From Mizuhopecten yessoensis (lineage: Eukaryota), in NCBI RefSeq assembly GCF_002113885.1, contig NW_018408252.1, forward strand, positions 389,188 to 453,187: a stretch of 64,000 nucleotides of DNA. Direction: 5' to 3'. The notes below the pieces were generated by a model, which was not told where the DNA came from, did no database searches, and saw nothing but the letters and a program-made list of their open reading frames with translations. Positions 30,198-48,307 of the stretch are shown here, piece after piece. Each line of letters starts with the position of its first letter. Position 1 is the first letter of the stretch. The translations under genes were made by a program, and so were the position numbers.

Positions 30198-31134
30198 GGC
30201 CAAAAAATGAATCAAATGCGACGACCATTCCAACAACCGGAAGTCCGAACATTCTACAACCTACCAATGTGACCGTTCCACCATCTACCAATGTGACCAT
30301 TCCACAACCTACGAATGTGATCGTTCCACATCCTACCAATGTGACCTTTCCACAACCTACCAATGTGACCATTCCACAACCTACCAATGTGATCGTTCCA
30401 CAACCTACCAATGTGACCGTTCCACCACCTACCAATGTGACCATTCCGCAAATTACCAATGTGACCATTCCACCACCTACCAATGTGACCGTTCCACAAC
30501 CTACCAATGTGACCATTCCGCAACCTATCAATGTGACCGTTCCACAACCTTACAATGTGACCATTCCGCAACCTACCAATGTGACCATTCCGCAACCTAC
30601 CAATGTGACCATTCCACCACCTACCAATGTGACCTTTCCGCAACCTACCAATGTGACTATTCCACCACCTAACAATGTGACCTTTCCGCAACCTATCAAT
30701 GTGACCGTTCCACAACCTTACAATGTGACCATTCCGCAACCTACCAATGTGACCGTTCCACAACCTACCAATGTGACCATTCCGCAAACTACACATGCCA
30801 CCCCGCAATCTTCAATAATGGTCAATGTCTCCCAACCTATGAGTACGACCGCCAGCTCGCAAACCACAAATCCGACCCTCCCACAAACAACTAAAACAAC
30901 AACAACAACAACAACAACCTCACAGTCAACTAATCCGACAACAGCAGGATCAAAGTGTCCCATAAATGCACAAAGGTACAATCACCACGGACAGGTGATT
31001 TGTTACTGGTTGCTAGTCGCAACTGCCAGGATACAAAACCAGGCTTACGATACCTGTTTACAACAGGGAGGACAACTGCCTATCATACCTAACTCAGAGG
31101 CTAATGAGGTTGTTGTCGATCTCATCTCAACCAG
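30198..31134 (+). CDS. Mucin-lectin gene exon B: 22 x PQPTNVT[IVF] stalk, Thr-rich linker, start of C-type lectin domain
   Basis: Acceptor tttaaag|GG (phase 1) matches exon A. CP..CYW..A..C..GGQL CTLD N-half; donor AG|gtaaca. Confidence 0.85.
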
Positions 31135-32084: not shown

Positions 32085-32440
32085 CATCCTCGATATTCAG
32101 GGGTTACGTTCACTTTCGCTCTCTGCACCCCTAGAATATGCCATAGCAAAATTGAAGGCACGAACATGGCTGTTTGATTGGTCTCAGGTAAAAAAATCCT
32201 GACCAATCGCTAGGCTAATACCTGTCCTTTGAAGATTACAAAGGAGAGACGGCCGACTTCAAAGCCTGTCAATTTTTACCGTTACGTGACCGCGATATTC
32301 TGTTGATGTACATCAAAGGATCGAACTAGTCTTCTTGTCTCATCAACAAGGTGGCGCACACTGAGCCTTCAATTTTGCCATGACATATTTCAGGGGTGTA
32401 CAGAGCGAAAGTGGGCGTAATCCCTGGAGTATCGAGAATG
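32085..32440. mobile_element. Mutator-like MITE, copy 1
   Basis: ~70-bp TIRs catcctcgatattcaggggttac.. ; 9-bp flanks gtccctccg / gtctctccg. Confidence 0.88.
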
Positions 32441-33060
32441 GTCTCTCCGGGACTTTTCGGTGATGCTGTGGGGCAAAACAAAAAATCCATATCACAAAAT
32501 ACAGTTGAAAATGAAGATATGTGCGAAAAACTCATTGATTATATGAATTTCAAAAGTATTTGATGTAAAAGTGTGAAGGACGATTAACATATCTAGAAAC
32601 AATGCCGGAAGCTACCAATACACAGTTCAGTCAAGCTTCATCGATCAGGCATTAAAGATTCTTAGTTACTAAAATCAAAATTAAAGTAAAATGTATACAT
32701 TATGATAAAACAAATACCATTAGTCCTAATCTTTCAATTAGATTTCGAAAAAAACTATGATTAAACATTTAATACATAAAGTTAATGCAAGTCAAGGGTC
32801 AAGTTGTCACCTGCTTTGTTATATTACTTTTACGTTCAAGTCACATTTTCTAGTCACAATTCATTGTTTTTAAAATTTGTATGCGTGTTTAACTAAAGAG
32901 TTATCATTCAATTTCTTAAACTTTGATAATCATAAAACGTTCACCGATTTATAACAGGTCTTGAATCTAGATTAAGCCGACATATATCAACAACTGAATT
33001 CCTATTACTTCTTTTATTATCATTGGTATGAAATTTAAGGTTTTATGGTTTTATTTTGTT

Positions 33061-33345
33061 TGACGTCCTATTGACAGCTAAGGTCGTGTCTCCATGTGTA
33101 TTGTGTAACGGTGCAAGTTTGCTGGAGACAGGGTATGTTGGTGTACTTGCCTCCTTGTAATAGAGCGGATCTGATGCCGAATTGATAGTGCTATCTCACT
33201 GAAAAACCATGCCGAAGGCATCCAGCACAACATTCCGCCCGGTCACATTATACTGACAGCGGGTGAACCAGTTGTTGCAATTAACCCCCAATGCAGAACG
33301 TTCAACATGGAATAAAAACTACCATTTTTAAAGACTTTGGTATTG
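33061..33345 (-). mobile_element. SINE family B (Meta/Deu-domain-like)
   Basis: Reverse complement of 34745-35068. Confidence 0.75.
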
Positions 33346-33499
33346 AAGACAGAACCCATTGCCTTCCTGACCTGGGCAGGCTTGTTTTTGCATCAGTAGG
33401 GCATTAAATCACACACAAAAAAACAATATAGGAATATCATCAACTAATGCAATCGTTATAGACGTAGCTCATGACATGATATTCAATTCTCTTTTGTAG

Positions 33500-33714
33500 T
33501 AATGCAAACATTTTCTATCTGGACTATACAGTAAATTATACCAGTGGGAAAATCATGACGTCATCCGGCAGCCCTCAGGATTGGAACAATGGTATCAACA
33601 CAACACAGCCTAACGGTCCGTGCGTGGTCACCAATGGTAACGGCACCTGGAGTAGTTCCGTCTGTGACGTATCTACATACAATGGCGTCATCTGCTCAGC
33701 ATGTAAGGGAGGAG
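33500..33714 (+). CDS. Mucin-lectin gene exon C: C-type lectin C-half
   Basis: Acceptor ttttgtag|T (phase 2). W..QPNGPCVV..W...C..VIC; donor G|gtaagg (alternative phase-1 donor after 33702). Confidence 0.82.
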
Positions 33715-33750
33715 GTAAGGTTCAGCCATGGATTTGGATATGTTTTGGTT

Positions 33751-34072
33751 TATCCAGGGGTTACACTCACTCTGCACCCCTGGAGTATGTCATAGCAAAA
33801 TAGAAGGATCAGTGTGCGCCACCTTGTTCGAAGACTAGTTCGATCCTTTGATGTACAGCGAAAGAATATCGCGGTCGCGTAACGGTAAAAAATTACTAAC
33901 TTTAAATGTCGTCCCTGTGTAATCTTCAAAGGGCAGGTGTCAGCCTAGCGATTGGTCAGGGTTTGCTTACTCTGACCAATCAAATAGCTGTCTTTATGCC
34001 TTCAATTTTACTGTGATATATGCCAGGAGTGCAGGGAGCGTAAGTGGGCATAACCCCTGGATATCGAGGACG
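33751..34072. mobile_element. Mutator-like MITE, copy 2 (opposite orientation, left end clipped)
   Basis: Same TIR and internal sequence as 32085-32440, inverted. Confidence 0.85.
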
Positions 34073-34744
34073 GACGGGATGATACACAAAGGGAAAGACG
34101 TCTAACGTTATCATTAGTACACATCAAGTCATAAATAAAATATGGTCTGTACTTATATATTCTTGTTGACATCACATGAAAAATTCAATGTTCAGATGAT
34201 TTTTGTTTAGTTGACAAACAGTAAGTCTATCGTATGAACTGACAATTCTTTTCATTTGTCCAAGCCATTCTTTCTAATTCGTCTTCCTCAAAATCATGTC
34301 TTTTTGCAACACCAAAATTATACTTTATAAAACATTTTAGTTTCTATACCGTTAGTGTTTTGACGTTAGATGCAGTTGAATTGCATCAAGTGTGGGCGAG
34401 TGGCTGTTTCGTTACCAAGTTGACATAATATTACAGGGGAATTACAATGTCGTTACTGAGAAGATCAAGTATTTTTATTGCTTCGAGTCAAAGTAACAAA
34501 AGTGCGATATTTACAATGCATAATACAAAATAGCATTACACAACATTACACACACTCACAACACAACTACAAATAGTGTCCCAATCAACAATGTTCAGTT
34601 GCCATACCGTTACTGTTGTTGACCTGACCTGTATAATAATAACCTCACTACTGGTATTACCATACTCAGGTTTGGTACTGATCAGATGTTCTGTCATATA
34701 TACAGTTCCATGTGCGGGTTATATTGCTTCTTGTGCTGCTAGAC

Positions 34745-35068
34745 ATAGGCAATGGGTTCTGACCCCAGGCCGGGACATGCCGCAGTCCTTGAAATGGTAG
34801 TTGTTATTCCCTGCTTAATGTTCAGCATTTAAGGTTATGGCAATAACTGGTCCACCCGCTGTCAGTATAATGTGACCGGGCAGAATGCTGTGTTGGATGC
34901 TTTCGGCATGGTATTTCAGTGAGATGGCACTATAAAGTCGGCATCAGATCCGCGCTTTCACAAGGAGGCAGGTACACCAACATACCCTGTCTTCAGCACA
35001 CATACACGCATACACAACACACATGGAGGCACGTCCTTATAGACTTTAGCTGTTAATAGGACGTTAGA
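34745..35068 (+). mobile_element. SINE family B (Meta/Deu-domain-like); partial copies at ~38345-38490 and ~44960-45025
   Basis: aaatggtagttg..gtcagtataatgtgaccggg..cagtgagatggcactataaag..gtcctta..gctgttaataggacgtta. Confidence 0.75.
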
Positions 35069-35125
35069 CAAGTATAGCTAACGTAGGTATCATGTCGAGT
35101 ATATTTGTGTTGTTGTATATTCTAG

Positions 35126-35445
35126 GTGCGTCGTGCTATACCCACAGCAAAAACTATTGCGGCCCTTGCTCTTGTCCAAACTACATCGTTAACCAAGTTG
35201 ATATTACAGAGAAGCTGCAGAGAAAGCTGGACGACTTGAGGAGAGCCACGAGTGTCAATAAGAAGAATACATCTAGAACACTACGTAGGATAACCTGCGC
35301 CAGTGATCCTCGACCCTCCTCGGCCGCCATGGGATACCTAGGAGCATCCGTACTCACGGTCGTTTTCGGTGGGTTCATCTTGCTCGACCTACCAATGTTG
35401 TTTCTGGAGTTTAAGACCCATATACTCGGTCTTTTCCAAGGATAG
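35126..35445 (+). CDS. Mucin-lectin gene terminal exon D: Cys motif, coiled coil, TM segment
   Basis: Acceptor ttctag|GT (phase 1). CGPCSC, helical EKLQRKLDDLRR, DPRPSS, hydrophobic MGYLGASVLTVVFGGFILLD, stop. Confidence 0.82.
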
Positions 35446-35781
35446 AATAACGTCTTGTGTGTTATCACATACATCTCCATATAGTAGTCGTACGTTGTAG
35501 TTGTAGAGTTTCGCCGAGTTAAGAGGTTGGCGCATATGGCAGGAAACTGTTTCACAAATATAATCCATTTGTTAAAATGGCAAAAGGTTTTGAAAACTAC
35601 TTTATATTATAAAAACATTTATTCAGAGATATATCCTGTGCAATCACATAACGTTATACCAAACCTTAGTTATGCCGGAAATACTGTTTCCAACACGTTG
35701 TTACAGATTTCGACAGTGGTAGGGGGGTCATTATATTGCTTTATGAATTTCGTCAAAATTTATATTTATCAGTTCTATTAC

Positions 35782-36091
35782 CATCCTCGACATCGTGGGG
35801 TTACGCTCACTTTCGCTCTCTACATCCCTGGAATGTCATAGAAAAATTGAAGACACGAAGCAAGCTGCTTGATTGGTTTCACGTAAAAAACCTGACTAAT
35901 CGCTAGGCTGATACCTGTCTTTTAAAGATTACAAAGGAGAGACGCCCGACTTCAAAGCCTGTCAATTTTTACCGTTATGTGACCGCGAGATTCTTTTAAT
36001 GTACATCGTTCACTGAACCTTCAATTTTGCTACGACATATTCCAGCGGTGTAGAGAGCGAAAGTGAATGTAACCCCTGGATATCGATGATG
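35782..36091. mobile_element. Mutator-like MITE, copy 3
   Basis: Same TIRs; 9-bp flanks ttctattac / ttctattcc. Confidence 0.88.
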
Positions 36092-43724: not shown

Positions 43725-44345
43725 GATACCATTGTCAAGGAAAGTTTCCAGATATGATAGCTACCACCTGAAGTTGTCCATCCGGGTTAAAAATGAAATT
43801 CCTTCTGACCTTTTTCTTTTTACAAAGTTATGGCCCTTTGTTGAGAAATGCTTGTCCGGACAACTCCTCAAAAACTACGAGCCAATTTCAACGATATTTT
43901 TCAAAAATGATAACTACCACCTGCATCCAGGTATTATTATTTTTTTCATTCTGACCCTTTTTACGGAGTTATTGCCCTTTGTTGAAAAATGCTTACCCGC
44001 ACAACTTCTCCAAAACTTCTGGGTGCCTATTTCAATGAAAATGTTCACATATGATAACTACCATCTGATGTTGTGCATCCAGGTATACTTTTTTCAATCC
44101 GTCCCTTTTTTGGAGTAAATGCCCTTTGTTGAAAAATACTTGTCTAGACAACTACTCCAAGACTATGCAGCCAATTTGAACGAAAGTTTCCAGATATGAT
44201 AATTACCCCCTGATGTTGTGCATCCAGGTATTTTTTTCCAACCCCTTTTTTATAGAGTTGTGGCCCGCTTTTGAAAAATCCTTGTCCTGACAACTTCTCC
44301 TAATCTACTCAGCCATTTTCAAAGAAGAAAGTTTACAGATATGGT
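43725..44345. repeat. ~150-bp tandem satellite, about 4 diverged copies
   Basis: Recurring atgataactacca..gttgtgcatccagg..gagttatggccctttgttgaaaaatgcttgtcc..acaactcc. Confidence 0.85.
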
Positions 44346-44850: not shown

Positions 44851-45229
44851 TTAATAGTTGTTGTAAAGTTTATATCTATATTTATATTTCATAACTTGCA
44901 GACCAGCAGAATCAATATTATCAATATGCTCGTTTATAACATATGAACCATGGGCACACATGCATACATTACACACACGAAGCACGTCCTTAAATGACAA
45001 TATCTTTTGATAGGACACTTAACCATGCTAAACCAAATAGAGTCAATGAATGTGTCCATAAAGCAGCATGTGCCTTCAGCCTTCAGACACATAACCACAG
45101 CAGAGAAACAGAAAAAATAATTGTCTTAATTAGTATAACAAATATGTCATTTAGAACACCTTGTGCACACAACTTCCACGTGATGTGTGATCGACAAAAC
45201 ACCATCACAGCCCTCATCATTCATTATAT

Positions 45230-48227
45230 CATCCTCGACATTCCAGGGGTTATAGTCTCTAACATTCCAGGGTTATACTCTCTAACATTCCAGGGGTTAT
45301 ACTCCCTAACATTCCAGGGGTTATACTCTCTAATATTCCAGGGGTTATACTCTCTAACATTCCAGGGGTTATACTCTCTAACATTCCAGGGGTTATACTC
45401 TCTAACATTCCAGGGGTTATACTCTCTAACATTCCAGGGGTTATACTCTCTAACATTCCAGGGGTTATACTCTCTAACATTCCAGGGGTTATACTCTCTA
45501 ACATTCCAGGGGTTATACTCTCTAACATTCCAGGGGTTATACTCTCTAACATTCCAGGGGTTATACTCTCTAACATTCCAGGGGTTATACTCTCTAACAT
45601 TCCAGGGGTTATACTCTCTAACATTCCAGGGGTTATACTCTCTAACATTCCAGGGGTTATACTCTCTAACATTCCAGGGGTTATACTCTCTAACATTCCA
45701 GGGGTTATACTCTCTAACATTCCAGGGGTTATACTCTCTAACATTCCAGGGGTTATACTCTCTAACATTCCAGGGGTTATACTCTCTAACATTCCAGGGG
45801 TTATACTCTCTAACATTCCAGGGGTTATACTCTCTAACATTCCAGGGGTTATACTCTCTAACATTCCAGGGGTTATACTCTCTAACATTCCAGGGGTTAT
45901 ACTCTCTAACATTCCAGGGGTTATACTCTCTAACATTCCAGGGGTTATACTCTCTAACATTCCAGGGGTTATACTCTCTAACATTCCAGGGGTTATACTC
46001 TCTAACATTCCAGGGGTTATACTCTCTAACATTCCAGGGGTTATACTCTCTAACATTCCAGGGGTTATACTCTCTAACATTCCAGGGGTTATACTCTCTA
46101 ACATTCCAGGGGTTATACTCTCTAACATTCCAGGGGTTATACTCTCTAACATTCCAGGGGTTATACTCTCTAACATTCCAGGGGTTATACTCTCTAACAT
46201 TCCAGGGGTTATACTCTCTAACATTCCAGGGGTTATACTCTCTAACATTCCAGGGGTTATACTCTCTAACATTCCAGGGGTTATACTCTCTAACATTCCA
46301 GGGGTTATACTCTCTAACATTCCAGGGGTTATACTCTCTAACATTCCAGGGGTTATACTCTCTAACATTCCAGGGGTTATACTCTCTAACATTCCAGGGG
46401 TTATACTCTCTAACATTCCAGGGGTTATACTCTCTAACATTCCAGGGGTTATACTCTCTAACATTCCAGGGGTTATACTCTCTAACATTCCAGGGGTTAT
46501 ACTCTCTAACATTCCAGGGGTTATACTCTCTAACATTCCAGGGGTTATACTCTCTAACATTCCAGGGGTTATACTCTCTAACATTCCAGGGGTTATACTC
46601 TCTAACATTCCAGGGGTTATACTCTCTAACATTCCAGGGGTTATACTCTCTAACATTCCAGGGGTTATACTCTCTAACATTCCAGGGGTTATACTCTCTA
46701 ACATTCCAGGGGTTATACTCTCTAACATTCCAGGGGTTATACTCTCTAACATTCCAGGGGTTATACTCTCTAACATTCCAGGGGTTATACTCTCTAACAT
46801 TCCAGGGGTTATACTCTCTAACATTCCAGGGGTTATACTCTCTAACATTCCAGGGGTTATACTCTCTAACATTCCAGGGGTTATACTCTCTAACATTCCA
46901 GGGGTTATACTCTCTAACATTCCAGGGGTTATACTCTCTAACATTCCAGGGGTTATACTCTCTAACATTCCAGGGGTTATACTCTCTAACATTCCAGGGG
47001 TTATACTCTCTAACATTCCAGGGGTTATACTCTCTAACATTCCAGGGGTTATACTCTCTAACATTCCAGGGGTTATACTCTCTAACATTCCAGGGGTTAT
47101 ACTCTCTAACATTCCAGGGGTTATACTCTCTAACATTCCAGGGGTTATACTCTCTAACATTCCAGGGGTTATACTCTCTAACATTCCAGGGGTTATACTC
47201 TCTAACATTCCAGGGGTTATACTCTCTAACATTCCAGGGGTTATACTCTCTAACATTCCAGGGGTTATACTCTCTAACATTCCAGGGGTTATACTCTCTA
47301 ACATTCCAGGGGTTATACTCTCTAACATTCCAGGGGTTATACTCTCTAACATTCCAGGGGTTATACTCTCTAACATTCCAGGGGTTATACTCTCTAACAT
47401 TCCAGGGGTTATACTCTCTAACATTCCAGGGGTTATACTCTCTAACATTCCAGGGGTTATACTCTCTAACATTCCAGGGGTTATACTCTCTAACATTCCA
47501 GGGGTTATACTCTCTAACATTCCAGGGGTTATACTCTCTAACATTCCAGGGGTTATACTCTCTAACATTCCAGGGGTTATACTCTCTAACATTCCAGGGG
47601 TTATACTCTCTAACATTCCAGGGGTTATACTCTCTAACATTCCAGGGGTTATACTCTCTAACATTCCAGGGGTTATACTCTCTAACATTGCAGGGGTTAT
47701 ACTCTCTAACATTTCAGGGGTTATACTCTCTAACATTCCAGGGTTATACTCTCTAACATTCCAGGGGTTATACTCTCTAACATTCCAGGGGTGATACTCT
47801 CTAACACTCCAGGGGTTATACTCTCTAACATTCCAGGGGTTATACTCCCTAACATTCCAGGGGTTATACTCTCTAACATTCCAGGGTTATACTTTCTAAC
47901 ACTCTAGGGGTTATACTCTCTAACATTCTCTGCACCTCTGTAATATGTCATGATGCAATCGAAGGCTCTGTGCGCGCTTCCTTGTTGATGATACAAATAT
48001 AAAAAAAAGTAGATGAGTTTGATTCTTTGATCAAAAGAATCACGCGTCCGCGTAACGGTAAAACTTACTGGCTTTGAAGTCGGGTATCGCTTCTCCGTAA
48101 TCTTCAAAAGAAAGATATCAGTGTCAGTAATTTTTAACTTAAAAATAGTTAACAGTGTGTCTTCGATTTTGCCTTTAAGGAGTACATAGAACGTTAATAT
48201 ACGTAACTCCTGGAATTTAGAAGGCTG
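45230..48227. mobile_element. Mutator-like MITE, copy 4, containing the 24-bp satellite
   Basis: Begins catcctcgacattccaggggtta. MITE body resumes at ~47928 and ends taactcctggaatttagaaggctg; 9-bp flanks tcattatat / tcattaaat. Confidence 0.8.
45239..47927. repeat. 24-bp satellite, about 112 near-identical copies
   Basis: Unit cattccaggggttatactctctaa; variants only at the two edges. Confidence 0.98.
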
Positions 48228-48307
48228 TCATTAAATGACATCTTAGTGGTCGGTCCTGTTCTGTAACTGTCTTTATAGCGAACCATATATTTAGATTTCC
48301 ATTCATT

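What the first reader, a model, noticed from the sequence alone, without database searches (positions are those of the whole stretch)
45230..48227. A 2.7-kb satellite born inside the terminal inverted repeat of a single MITE copy
Seen: the 24-bp unit is part of the left TIR of a MITE present unexpanded three times at 32085-36091. The array starts about 9 bp inside the element (catcctcga|cattccagggg) and the MITE body resumes right after it. The whole 3 kb is bounded by a 9-bp duplication (tcattatat/tcattaaat). The core is uniform with variants only at the edges. Established: 9-bp TSDs with long TIRs typify Mutator-like elements, and TEs can seed satellites. Inference: this is a complete snapshot of satellite birth, creating ~112 copies of a possible transposase-binding motif that could act as a sink. 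The decayed MITE body versus the uniform array implies expansion long after insertion.
Basis: partly seen in the sequence, partly recalled or inferred. Interest (0 to 1): 0.78.

Follow-up and report, generated by a model that had tools for sequence, protein, structure and literature searches.

The report
Minisatellite grown from a MITE end
A 2.7-kb run of about 112 copies of a 24-base unit sits inside one end of an old miniature transposon, but this transposon family does the same at dozens of other places in the genome and similar cases are published for insects, so it is a tidy example of a known process.

Summary
Window 45238-47928 is a 24-bp x 112 tandem array: 97 identical core units, with variants only at the two edges. 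It lies inside the left terminal inverted repeat (TIR) of one copy of a 354-356-bp MITE. The family has 75-bp TIRs, 9-bp target-site duplications (TSDs) and thousands of copies. The two flanks are two halves of one element: they share sublineage-specific TIR markers and an 8/9 TSD.

The array is bounded by a native 6-bp direct repeat (ACATTC) spaced 24 bp apart, the usual signature of a slippage or microhomology duplication. The host copy looks old (left TIR vs right TIR 78.5% identical).

- The exact unit is private to this locus, but at least 34 other loci carry tandem arrays of the same TIR core at periods of 24-32 bp. Some sit on both ends inside a perfect TSD, as in foldback elements.
- TIR-derived repeats that expand into satellites are published for Rehavkus/Mutator-like, Tetris and Galileo elements.
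- This is a single-locus minisatellite, not a satellite.
- The transposase-sink idea has no support.
- Array length and uniformity come from a gap-containing scaffold assembly and are unverified.

The parts
45221..45229 (+). Left 9-bp target-site duplication, TCATTATAT
   Evidence: Matches 48228-48236 at 8/9. A 9-bp TSD is seen in 17/23 family copies.
45230..45237 (+). Outermost 8 nt of the left TIR (CATCCTCG), before the array
   Evidence: Identical to family consensus positions 1-8.
45238..47928 (+). Tandem array, 24-bp unit ACATTCCAGGGGTTATACTCTCTA, 112.2 copies. The last 6 nt (ACATTC, 47923-47928) are native TIR sequence and form the second copy of the bounding direct repeat.
   Evidence: The right TIR carries ACGTTC at the homologous position.
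45357..47684 (+). Homogeneous core: 97 identical units
   Evidence: Edge units share variants across the two sides: the 1-bp G deletion at 45262, 47733 and 47876, and ACTCCCTA at 45285 and 47828.
47923..47966 (+). Inner part of the left TIR, resuming after the array
   Evidence: Collapsed to one unit, the left TIR is colinear with the 75-bp consensus TIR with a single 1-nt indel.
47967..48159 (+). Internal body of the MITE, reverse orientation relative to copy A
   Evidence: The whole collapsed element aligns to the reverse-complemented family consensus at 76.7% identity. BLAST against copy A gives 70.6% over 47901-48121.
48160..48227 (-). Right TIR, decayed, no array
   Evidence: 78.5% identical to the collapsed left TIR and shares its sublineage markers.
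48228..48236 (+). Right 9-bp target-site duplication, TCATTAAAT
32085..32440 (+). Unexpanded family copy A, full length. TSD GTCCCTCCG / GTCTCTCCG.
   Evidence: 95% identical to consensus.
33742..34072 (-). Unexpanded family copy B. Left terminal ~10 bp not recognisable; 8-bp gap in the left TIR.
   Evidence: 87% identical to consensus.
35782..36091 (+). Unexpanded family copy C, ~45-bp internal deletion. TSD TTCTATTAC / TTCTATTCC.
   Evidence: 92% identical to consensus.

Best explanation
This is a single-locus minisatellite that arose in place inside the left terminal inverted repeat of an old, decayed copy of a high-copy MITE. The family is 354-356 bp long with 75-bp TIRs and 9-bp TSDs, most likely Mutator/Rehavkus-like.

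Proposed sequence of events:
1. The inserted TIR carried the hexamer ACATTC twice, 24 bp apart (shown from the sequence and the right TIR).
2. Slipped-strand mispairing or microhomology-mediated repair between the two copies duplicated the 24 bp between them (inferred).
3. The short array then drifted and picked up unit variants (inferred).
4. A later burst of unequal sister-chromatid exchange or replication slippage amplified one variant. This gave the ~97 identical core units and pushed the older variant units to both edges (inferred).

The event is not unique. In this genome the outer 24-32 bp of this TIR type is tandemly repeated at dozens of loci, sometimes on both ends. TIR-end repeats are therefore a family trait of the foldback kind, and this locus is one of its larger private expansions. 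No function is indicated.
For: - The array is real in the assembly and far beyond chance.
- With the array collapsed to one unit, the left TIR is colinear with the family TIR.
- The hexamer after the array (ACATTC) corresponds to ACGTTC in the element's own right TIR. It is therefore native sequence, not a partial unit, and the structure is (24 bp)n bounded by a 6-bp direct repeat.
- The left and right TIRs share markers that the consensus lacks, and the TSD matches 8/9, so this is one element.
- The same TIR variant exists unexpanded at 6 or more other places.
- The host copy is old: left vs right TIR 78.5% identical, against 84-96% in 23 other copies.
- Units differ by less than 1%, and several edge variants occur on both sides of the core.
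- The exact dimer occurs only here: 105 matches, all at this locus.
- At least 34 other loci have 3 or more tandem copies of the TIR core.
- Held loci show what those arrays look like: L071 has 25-bp arrays on both ends inside a perfect TSD, and L078 has a 31-bp x3 array inside its TSD.
- Published precedent: Rehavkus TIR repeats expanding to an 80-kb satellite (bioRxiv 10.1101/2024.12.02.626372), Tetris (PMC4079207), and Aedes MULE subterminal repeats with variable copy number (PMC5225508).
Against: - Copy number and the perfect core rest on one scaffold-level assembly. That assembly has N gaps, one of them (49 N) inside a sister array in L089. A gap-filler or a collapsed repeat would also give a uniform core with variants only near the unique flanks.
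- A D-like TIR elsewhere (contig C1638, position 263711) also has ACATTCT and TTATAC. The direct repeat may therefore pre-date insertion, so it does not by itself date the duplication.
- No reads, no second individual and no orthologous empty site were available.
- The superfamily rests on TSD and TIR features only.
Confidence: 0.7

Rival explanations
1. The array exists, but its length and uniformity are assembly products. The assembler or a gap-closer filled a repeat of unknown size with consensus units, so '112 copies, 97 identical' is not biology.
For: - The genome is in 82,659 pieces and has N gaps in the held loci. One 49-N gap sits in the middle of a sister TIR array, L089 1623-1671.
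- Several other arrays of this kind are also letter-perfect over more than 1.5 kb (contigs C1829, C4809 and C2992).
- All variants lie within ~120 bp and ~245 bp of the unique flanks, which is about the reach of anchored short reads.
Against: - The window has no N and both junctions are continuous.
- Other arrays in the same assembly are imperfect (87-92% matches in L080, L088, L089), so the assembler does not always homogenise.
- Homogeneous cores with diverged edges are also the usual biological pattern for tandem arrays (general knowledge).
Confidence: 0.3
2. The element was already carrying tandem TIR repeats when it inserted. It would descend from a foldback-like master copy, and the locus only changed copy number afterwards.
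For: - Many family members carry terminal-unit arrays inside their TSDs, and the same 25-bp and 31-bp units recur at many loci. That pattern fits inheritance by transposition.
- L071 has arrays on both ends with a perfect TSD.
Against: - No other locus has this unit: the dimer search finds only this locus.
- The unit omits the terminal 8 nt that the recurrent units include.
- The right TIR of this element has a single copy.
- Six other D-like TIRs found by pattern are unexpanded.
Confidence: 0.12
3. The array is functional. It might act as a decoy that titrates the family's transposase, or as a regulatory or chromatin element between the neighbouring genes.
For: - The unit covers TIR positions about 9-32. 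The CCAGGGGTTA core is shared by several related TIR types in the genome, so it is a reasonable candidate binding site.
- In Aedes Muta1 the TIR carries subterminal tandem repeats whose number varies among derivative elements (PMC5225508).
Against: - No transposase has been linked to the family.
- The sampled copies are diverged and none is near-identical to another, so recent transposition is not shown.
- Conservation is flat along the whole TIR, with no motif standing out.
- One 2.7-kb locus is small against thousands of genomic TIRs that carry the same motif.
Confidence: 0.03

Closest known systems
Rehavkus (Mutator-related) foldback transposons of Tribolium and their TIR-resident satellites (TfSat25/TCsat12 and others); bioRxiv 10.1101/2024.12.02.626372, PMC6446971
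   Same: [quoted passage not shown] One TIR-resident repeat expanded locally into a long array, and copy number differs between copies.
   Different: - Here the carrier is a 356-bp non-coding MITE in what looks like a bivalve.
- The unit is 24 bp and only 2.7 kb at one locus, against up to 80 kb in Tribolium.
- Only one TIR is expanded.
- No Rehavkus or MULE transposase has been tied to it.
Tetris foldback element and TIR-220 satellite of Drosophila virilis (PMC4079207)
   Same: Tandem repeats inside the TIRs of a non-autonomous element serve as building blocks for kb-size arrays. A related MITE shares the TIR ends.
   Different: The Tetris unit is ~220 bp and is a fixed part of both TIRs. Its arrays occur at many heterochromatic sites. 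Here the unit is private to one euchromatic-looking locus between genes.
Aedes aegypti MULEs (Muta1 and relatives) with subterminal tandem repeats (PMC5225508)
   Same: 8-9-bp TSD, long TIRs, and short tandem repeats in the TIR whose number varies among non-autonomous derivatives.
   Different: Muta repeats are 9-15 bp with spacers, are part of the functional TIR on both ends, and number about 9 copies. There is no 100-copy expansion.
Tandem-repeat-containing MITEs and Helentron-borne repeats of bivalves (DTC84 in Donax, PMC3879986; CvA/pearl; Crassostrea Helentrons, PMC7492417)
   Same: A mollusc transposon carrying short tandem arrays that link mobile elements and satellite DNA.
   Different: In those elements the repeats form the central core, not the TIR, and they travel with the element. 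Here the array is derived from TIR sequence itself and is locus-specific.
Xenopus MITE-derived tandem repeats (Xstir; miDNA4), as reviewed in PMC12628747
   Same: MITE sequence turned into tandem arrays. Short direct repeats (microhomology) flanking the unit are proposed as the trigger.
   Different: Different superfamilies (miDNA4 is Tc1/mariner). Their units come from internal MITE sequence or whole MITEs, not from a 24-bp TIR segment.

Membership tests
MITE | Short non-coding element with terminal inverted repeats | tested here: met
   The consensus of 23 aligned full copies is 354 bp, with 75-bp TIRs conserved at 92-97% per 10-nt block. No ORF of note.
MITE | Target-site duplication of fixed length | tested here: met
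   9-bp TSD matching at 8/9 or better in 17 of 23 copies. At this locus it matches 8/9.
MITE | High copy number | tested here: met
   4,152 and 2,438 first-look candidates for two queries, and all 40 scored candidates in each were true hits. Exact copy number was not determined.
Mutator-like / Rehavkus superfamily | 9-bp (8-11 bp) TSD and long TIRs | tested here: met
   compare Table 1 of PMC6446971. Merlin elements can also give 8-9-bp TSDs (from memory), so this feature is not exclusive.
Mutator-like / Rehavkus superfamily | Tandem repeats in or next to the TIRs | tested here: met
   Seen in L071, L072, L078, L079, L080 and L089, and at 34 or more loci by pattern search.
Mutator-like / Rehavkus superfamily | An autonomous partner with the same TIRs encoding a MULE-type DDE transposase (with PHD finger for Rehavkus) | tested here: inconclusive
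   - PF10551 gives 65 matches over its cut-off in the genome, but none lies near a listed array locus.
- No transposase ORF is present in the 79 held loci.
Foldback element | Both TIRs built of tandem repeats | tested here: not met
   At this locus only the left TIR is expanded; the right TIR has one copy. The feature is met by another family member, L071, with 3 and 6 units.
Classical satellite DNA | Long arrays at several loci, making up an appreciable genome fraction | tested here: not met
   The dimer of the unit (up to 3 mismatches) occurs only at this locus, 2.7 kb in total.
Minisatellite (VNTR) | Unit of 10-100 bp in a single-locus array of 0.5-30 kb | tested here: met
Minisatellite (VNTR) | Length polymorphism between individuals | not testable with these tools
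   No reads or second assembly were available. The protein search with the array ORF found only four weak, non-identical hits, which says nothing either way.

The most novel reading that the evidence does not exclude
The outer 24-32 bp of this MITE group's TIR is a genome-wide nursery of minisatellites in a bivalve. Dozens of arrays with different unit phases arise repeatedly from the same TIR end. Some would be inherited by transposition of foldback-like sublineages, and others born in place at microhomologies, as at this locus. If so, one transposon family would account for a sizeable share of the species' 24-32-bp tandem repeats and would offer many independent replicates of array birth at different stages.
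Probability: 0.45. Interest if true: 0.45.

Novelty: new member of a known kind. Interest (0 to 1): 0.3.

Why it matters
- **A clean example.** The locus is unusually well preserved: intact TSD, both TIR halves, and the bounding 6-bp direct repeat still readable. That makes it a good teaching case for how a transposon end seeds a tandem array. It extends the Rehavkus, Tetris and Muta-type picture to what appears to be a mollusc.
- **Annotation.** The array is open in two frames, giving spurious ORFs of 920 and 825 aa.
- **Assembly quality control.** Sister arrays break the assembly.
- **Limits.** It does not open a new question. The process is already documented at larger scale in insects.

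Tried and rejected
- **Unit as the terminal 24 bp of the TIR.** I tested whether the unit is a diverged copy of the terminal 24 bp, as in the contig C3918 arrays. Rejected: only about 7 of 15 positions match outside the core, and the right TIR shows the unit's 3' neighbour is native TIR.
- **Internal TIR deletion.** I first read the unit as TIR positions 9-41 with a 9-bp deletion, like copy B. Rejected: the collapsed TIR is colinear with the consensus.
- **Autonomous partner.** The eight longest ORFs (240 aa or more) from the held loci gave no transposase; the only hits were Mab-21 and weak RVT. MULE-domain hits are not near array loci.
- **Independent evidence for the array.** A protein search with the 920-aa array ORF returned only four weak, non-identical hits. 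This is a blank and says nothing.
- **tRNA or SINE scan.** A scan of 43-50 kb found none.
- **Organism.** The size and piece count (987.6 Mb, 82,659) resemble, from memory, the short-read Yesso scallop reference. Three literature look-ups did not confirm this, so it stays a lead.
- **A most-conserved TIR motif.** Conservation is flat along the 75 bp.

Full report
**What is there**

Tandem Repeats Finder reports one array at 45238-47928: period 24, 112.2 copies, 99% matches. The unit ACATTCCAGGGGTTATACTCTCTA matches 109 times at up to 3 mismatches, where shuffles give none. A walk through the array shows 97 consecutive identical units at 45357-47684. Every variant unit lies in the first ~120 bp or the last ~245 bp. 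The window has no N.

Several variants occur on both sides of the core. The 1-bp G deletion is at 45262, 47733 and 47876, and ACTCCCTA is at 45285 and 47828. This looks like an older, mixed short array split by a later amplification of one unit type.

**The host element**

I fetched 30 genomic relatives and aligned 23 full-length copies. The results:
- The consensus is 354 bp (copy A is 356 bp), with 75-bp TIRs beginning CATCCTCGATATCCAGGGGTTAC.
- The TSD is 9 bp, matching at 8/9 or better in 17 of 23 copies.
- First-look candidate counts of 4,152 and 2,438 show a family of thousands.

The array-bearing element runs 45230-48227, with TSDs at 45221-45229 and 48228-48236 that match 8/9.

With the array collapsed to one unit, the element aligns end to end with the reverse-complemented consensus at 76.7% identity. 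Copies A, C and B give 95%, 92% and 87%, and the 23 genomic copies give 92-97%.

**Are the flanks two halves of one MITE?**

Yes. A joint alignment of all TIRs shows that the left (collapsed) and right TIR of this element share states that the family consensus lacks:
- ATTCCAGG, against AT-A-TCCAGG in the consensus.
- TAAC[A/G]TTCT, against TTTCGCTCT.
- ATCGAAG, against ATTGAAG.

The same TIR variant occurs unexpanded at six or more other places in the genome. The element therefore belongs to a minor sublineage, and part of its distance from the consensus is lineage difference rather than decay.

A fairer age measure is left TIR against right TIR: 78.5% identity (Jukes-Cantor distance 0.25). 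The 23 other copies give 84-96%. It is the oldest-looking copy examined. The 2,328-bp core has no substitution at all.

**How the array was born**

The collapsed left TIR is colinear with the consensus TIR with a single 1-nt indel. The hexamer that follows the last full unit, ACATTC at 47923-47928, aligns with ACGTTC in the element's own right TIR. It is therefore native TIR sequence and not a leftover partial unit.

The pre-expansion TIR thus read ACATTC, then 18 nt, then ACATTC. The array is exactly (24 bp)n bounded by that 6-bp direct repeat. This is the classical footprint of slipped-strand mispairing or microhomology-mediated duplication.

The first duplication step is inferred from this footprint. 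Later growth by unequal exchange or slippage is inferred from the pattern of a uniform core and shared edge variants.

**It is not a one-off**

The dimer of the exact unit occurs only here: 105 matches, all at this locus. But three tandem copies of the TIR core CCAGGGGTTA, spaced for periods of 18-32 bp, occur 560 times in the genome and never in the reversed control.

Searches split by period list at least 34 other loci:

| Period | Loci listed | Examples (contig) |
|---|---|---|
| 24 bp | 2 | C3918 (two arrays) |
| 25 bp | about 14 | C2292, C5537 and others |
| 26 bp | 3 | C414, C5541, C5551 |
| 28 bp | 7 | including C1185, C1638, C2992 |
| 30 bp | 2 | C3070, C4809 |
| 31 bp | 5 | C428, C688, C3059 (two), C4270 |
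| 32 bp | 2 | C1744; C1829 is over 1.8 kb |

Most of these units include the very terminus of the element. The same 25-bp and 31-bp units recur at many loci.

In the loci I could read:
- L071 has 25-bp arrays on both ends (3 and 6 units) inside a perfect 9-bp TSD.
- L078 has the terminal 31 bp three times inside its TSD.
- L079 has the same 31-bp unit 3.9 times at the other end.
- L080 has 16 units of a 28-bp repeat, and L089 has about 39 in two blocks.

Tandem repetition of the TIR end is therefore a trait of this transposon group, of the foldback kind. An unchecked first-reader note elsewhere in this genome describes a similar case (s1-514939).

**Comparison with what is known**

- Rehavkus elements are Mutator-related, with 9-bp TSDs and TIRs of 26-400 bp (PMC6446971). 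In Tribolium they carry variable numbers of tandem repeats in their inverted termini, and one such repeat expanded from 2-12 copies to an 80.5-kb array (bioRxiv 10.1101/2024.12.02.626372).
- Tetris did the same in Drosophila virilis (PMC4079207).
- Most Aedes MULE families have subterminal tandem repeats with variable copy number in their derivatives (PMC5225508).
- A 2025 review lists TIRs of DNA transposons as a recognised source of satellites, and microhomology as a proposed trigger (PMC12628747).
- The bivalve cases described so far (DTC84, CvA/pearl, Helentrons) carry their repeats in the centre of the element, not in the TIR (PMC3879986, PMC7492417, PMC5874043).

**Superfamily**

The 9-bp TSD, long TIRs and TIR repeats fit Mutator/Rehavkus. 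MULE transposase domains are present in the genome, with 65 matches over the Pfam cut-off. I could not link any of them to these TIRs. None lies near a listed array locus. No transposase ORF is in the held loci.

**Caveats**

The genome is in 82,659 pieces and carries N gaps. One 49-N gap sits inside the sister array in L089, so arrays of this kind are at the limit of what the assembly resolves. A perfect core with variants only near the unique flanks is also what a gap-filler would write.

The existence of the array and both junctions are secure. The copy number and the uniformity are not.

The array is open in two frames, giving 920 aa on the plus strand and 825 aa on the minus strand. A protein search with the 920-aa frame found only four weak, non-identical hits.

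**The sink idea**

Nothing supports it. No transposase is linked to the family, and none of the sampled copies is near-identical to another. TIR conservation is flat, with no motif standing out. One locus adds little to thousands of genomic TIRs with the same motif.

**Verdict**

This is a new member of a known kind and of modest interest.

Noticed in passing
window 44994-47756 (+) and 45259-47736 (-): Because the unit is 24 bp and free of stop codons in two frames, the array reads as ORFs of 920 aa (TFQGLYSL repeats) and 825 aa (MLESITPG repeats). A gene caller could report them as proteins. A protein search with the 920-aa ORF found only four weak, non-identical hits.
   Followed up: partly
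window 30250-30792: A second 24-bp tandem repeat (22.6 copies, 86% matches). It sits in the stretch an earlier first-reader note calls an N-glycan comb of a C-type-lectin receptor gene. It looks coding (an octapeptide like PQPTNVTI) and is unrelated in sequence to the MITE array. The shared period is a coincidence.
   Followed up: no
L089 1623-1671 (contig C1185): A 49-N assembly gap lies exactly between two blocks (28.6 and 10.5 units) of a 28-bp TIR-derived array. Arrays of this family break the assembly, so their lengths are unreliable.
   Followed up: partly
L013 1501-1853, L021 1501-1828, L031 1501-1860: Three of the 23 full copies sit next to or inside sequence of their own family. In L013 the TSD CCCTGGAAT is itself TIR sequence. 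The flanks of L021 and L031 read like TIR ends. This suggests nested or adjacent insertions, or extra terminal units outside the element.
   Followed up: no
contigs C4809:1346763-1348422, C1829:88125-89956 and C2992:136609-136870 (not fetched): Other long, letter-perfect arrays contain the same CCAGGGGTTA core. C4809 has a 30-bp unit, C1829 a 32-bp unit alternating as a 64-bp higher-order repeat, and C2992 a 28-bp unit. The C4809 unit shows little other TIR similarity and may come from a different element.
   Followed up: no
window 43832-44343: A 145-bp tandem repeat, 3.6 copies at 74-76% matches, lies about 1 kb upstream of the element. It was not characterised.
   Followed up: no
contig C1638:263711-263737 (not fetched): An unexpanded TIR carries both TTATAC and AACATTCT, the closest match to the pre-expansion left TIR of this locus. 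It lies 10 kb from a 28-bp TIR array on the same contig (C1638:273233-273746) whose unit also starts with ACATT.
   Followed up: no
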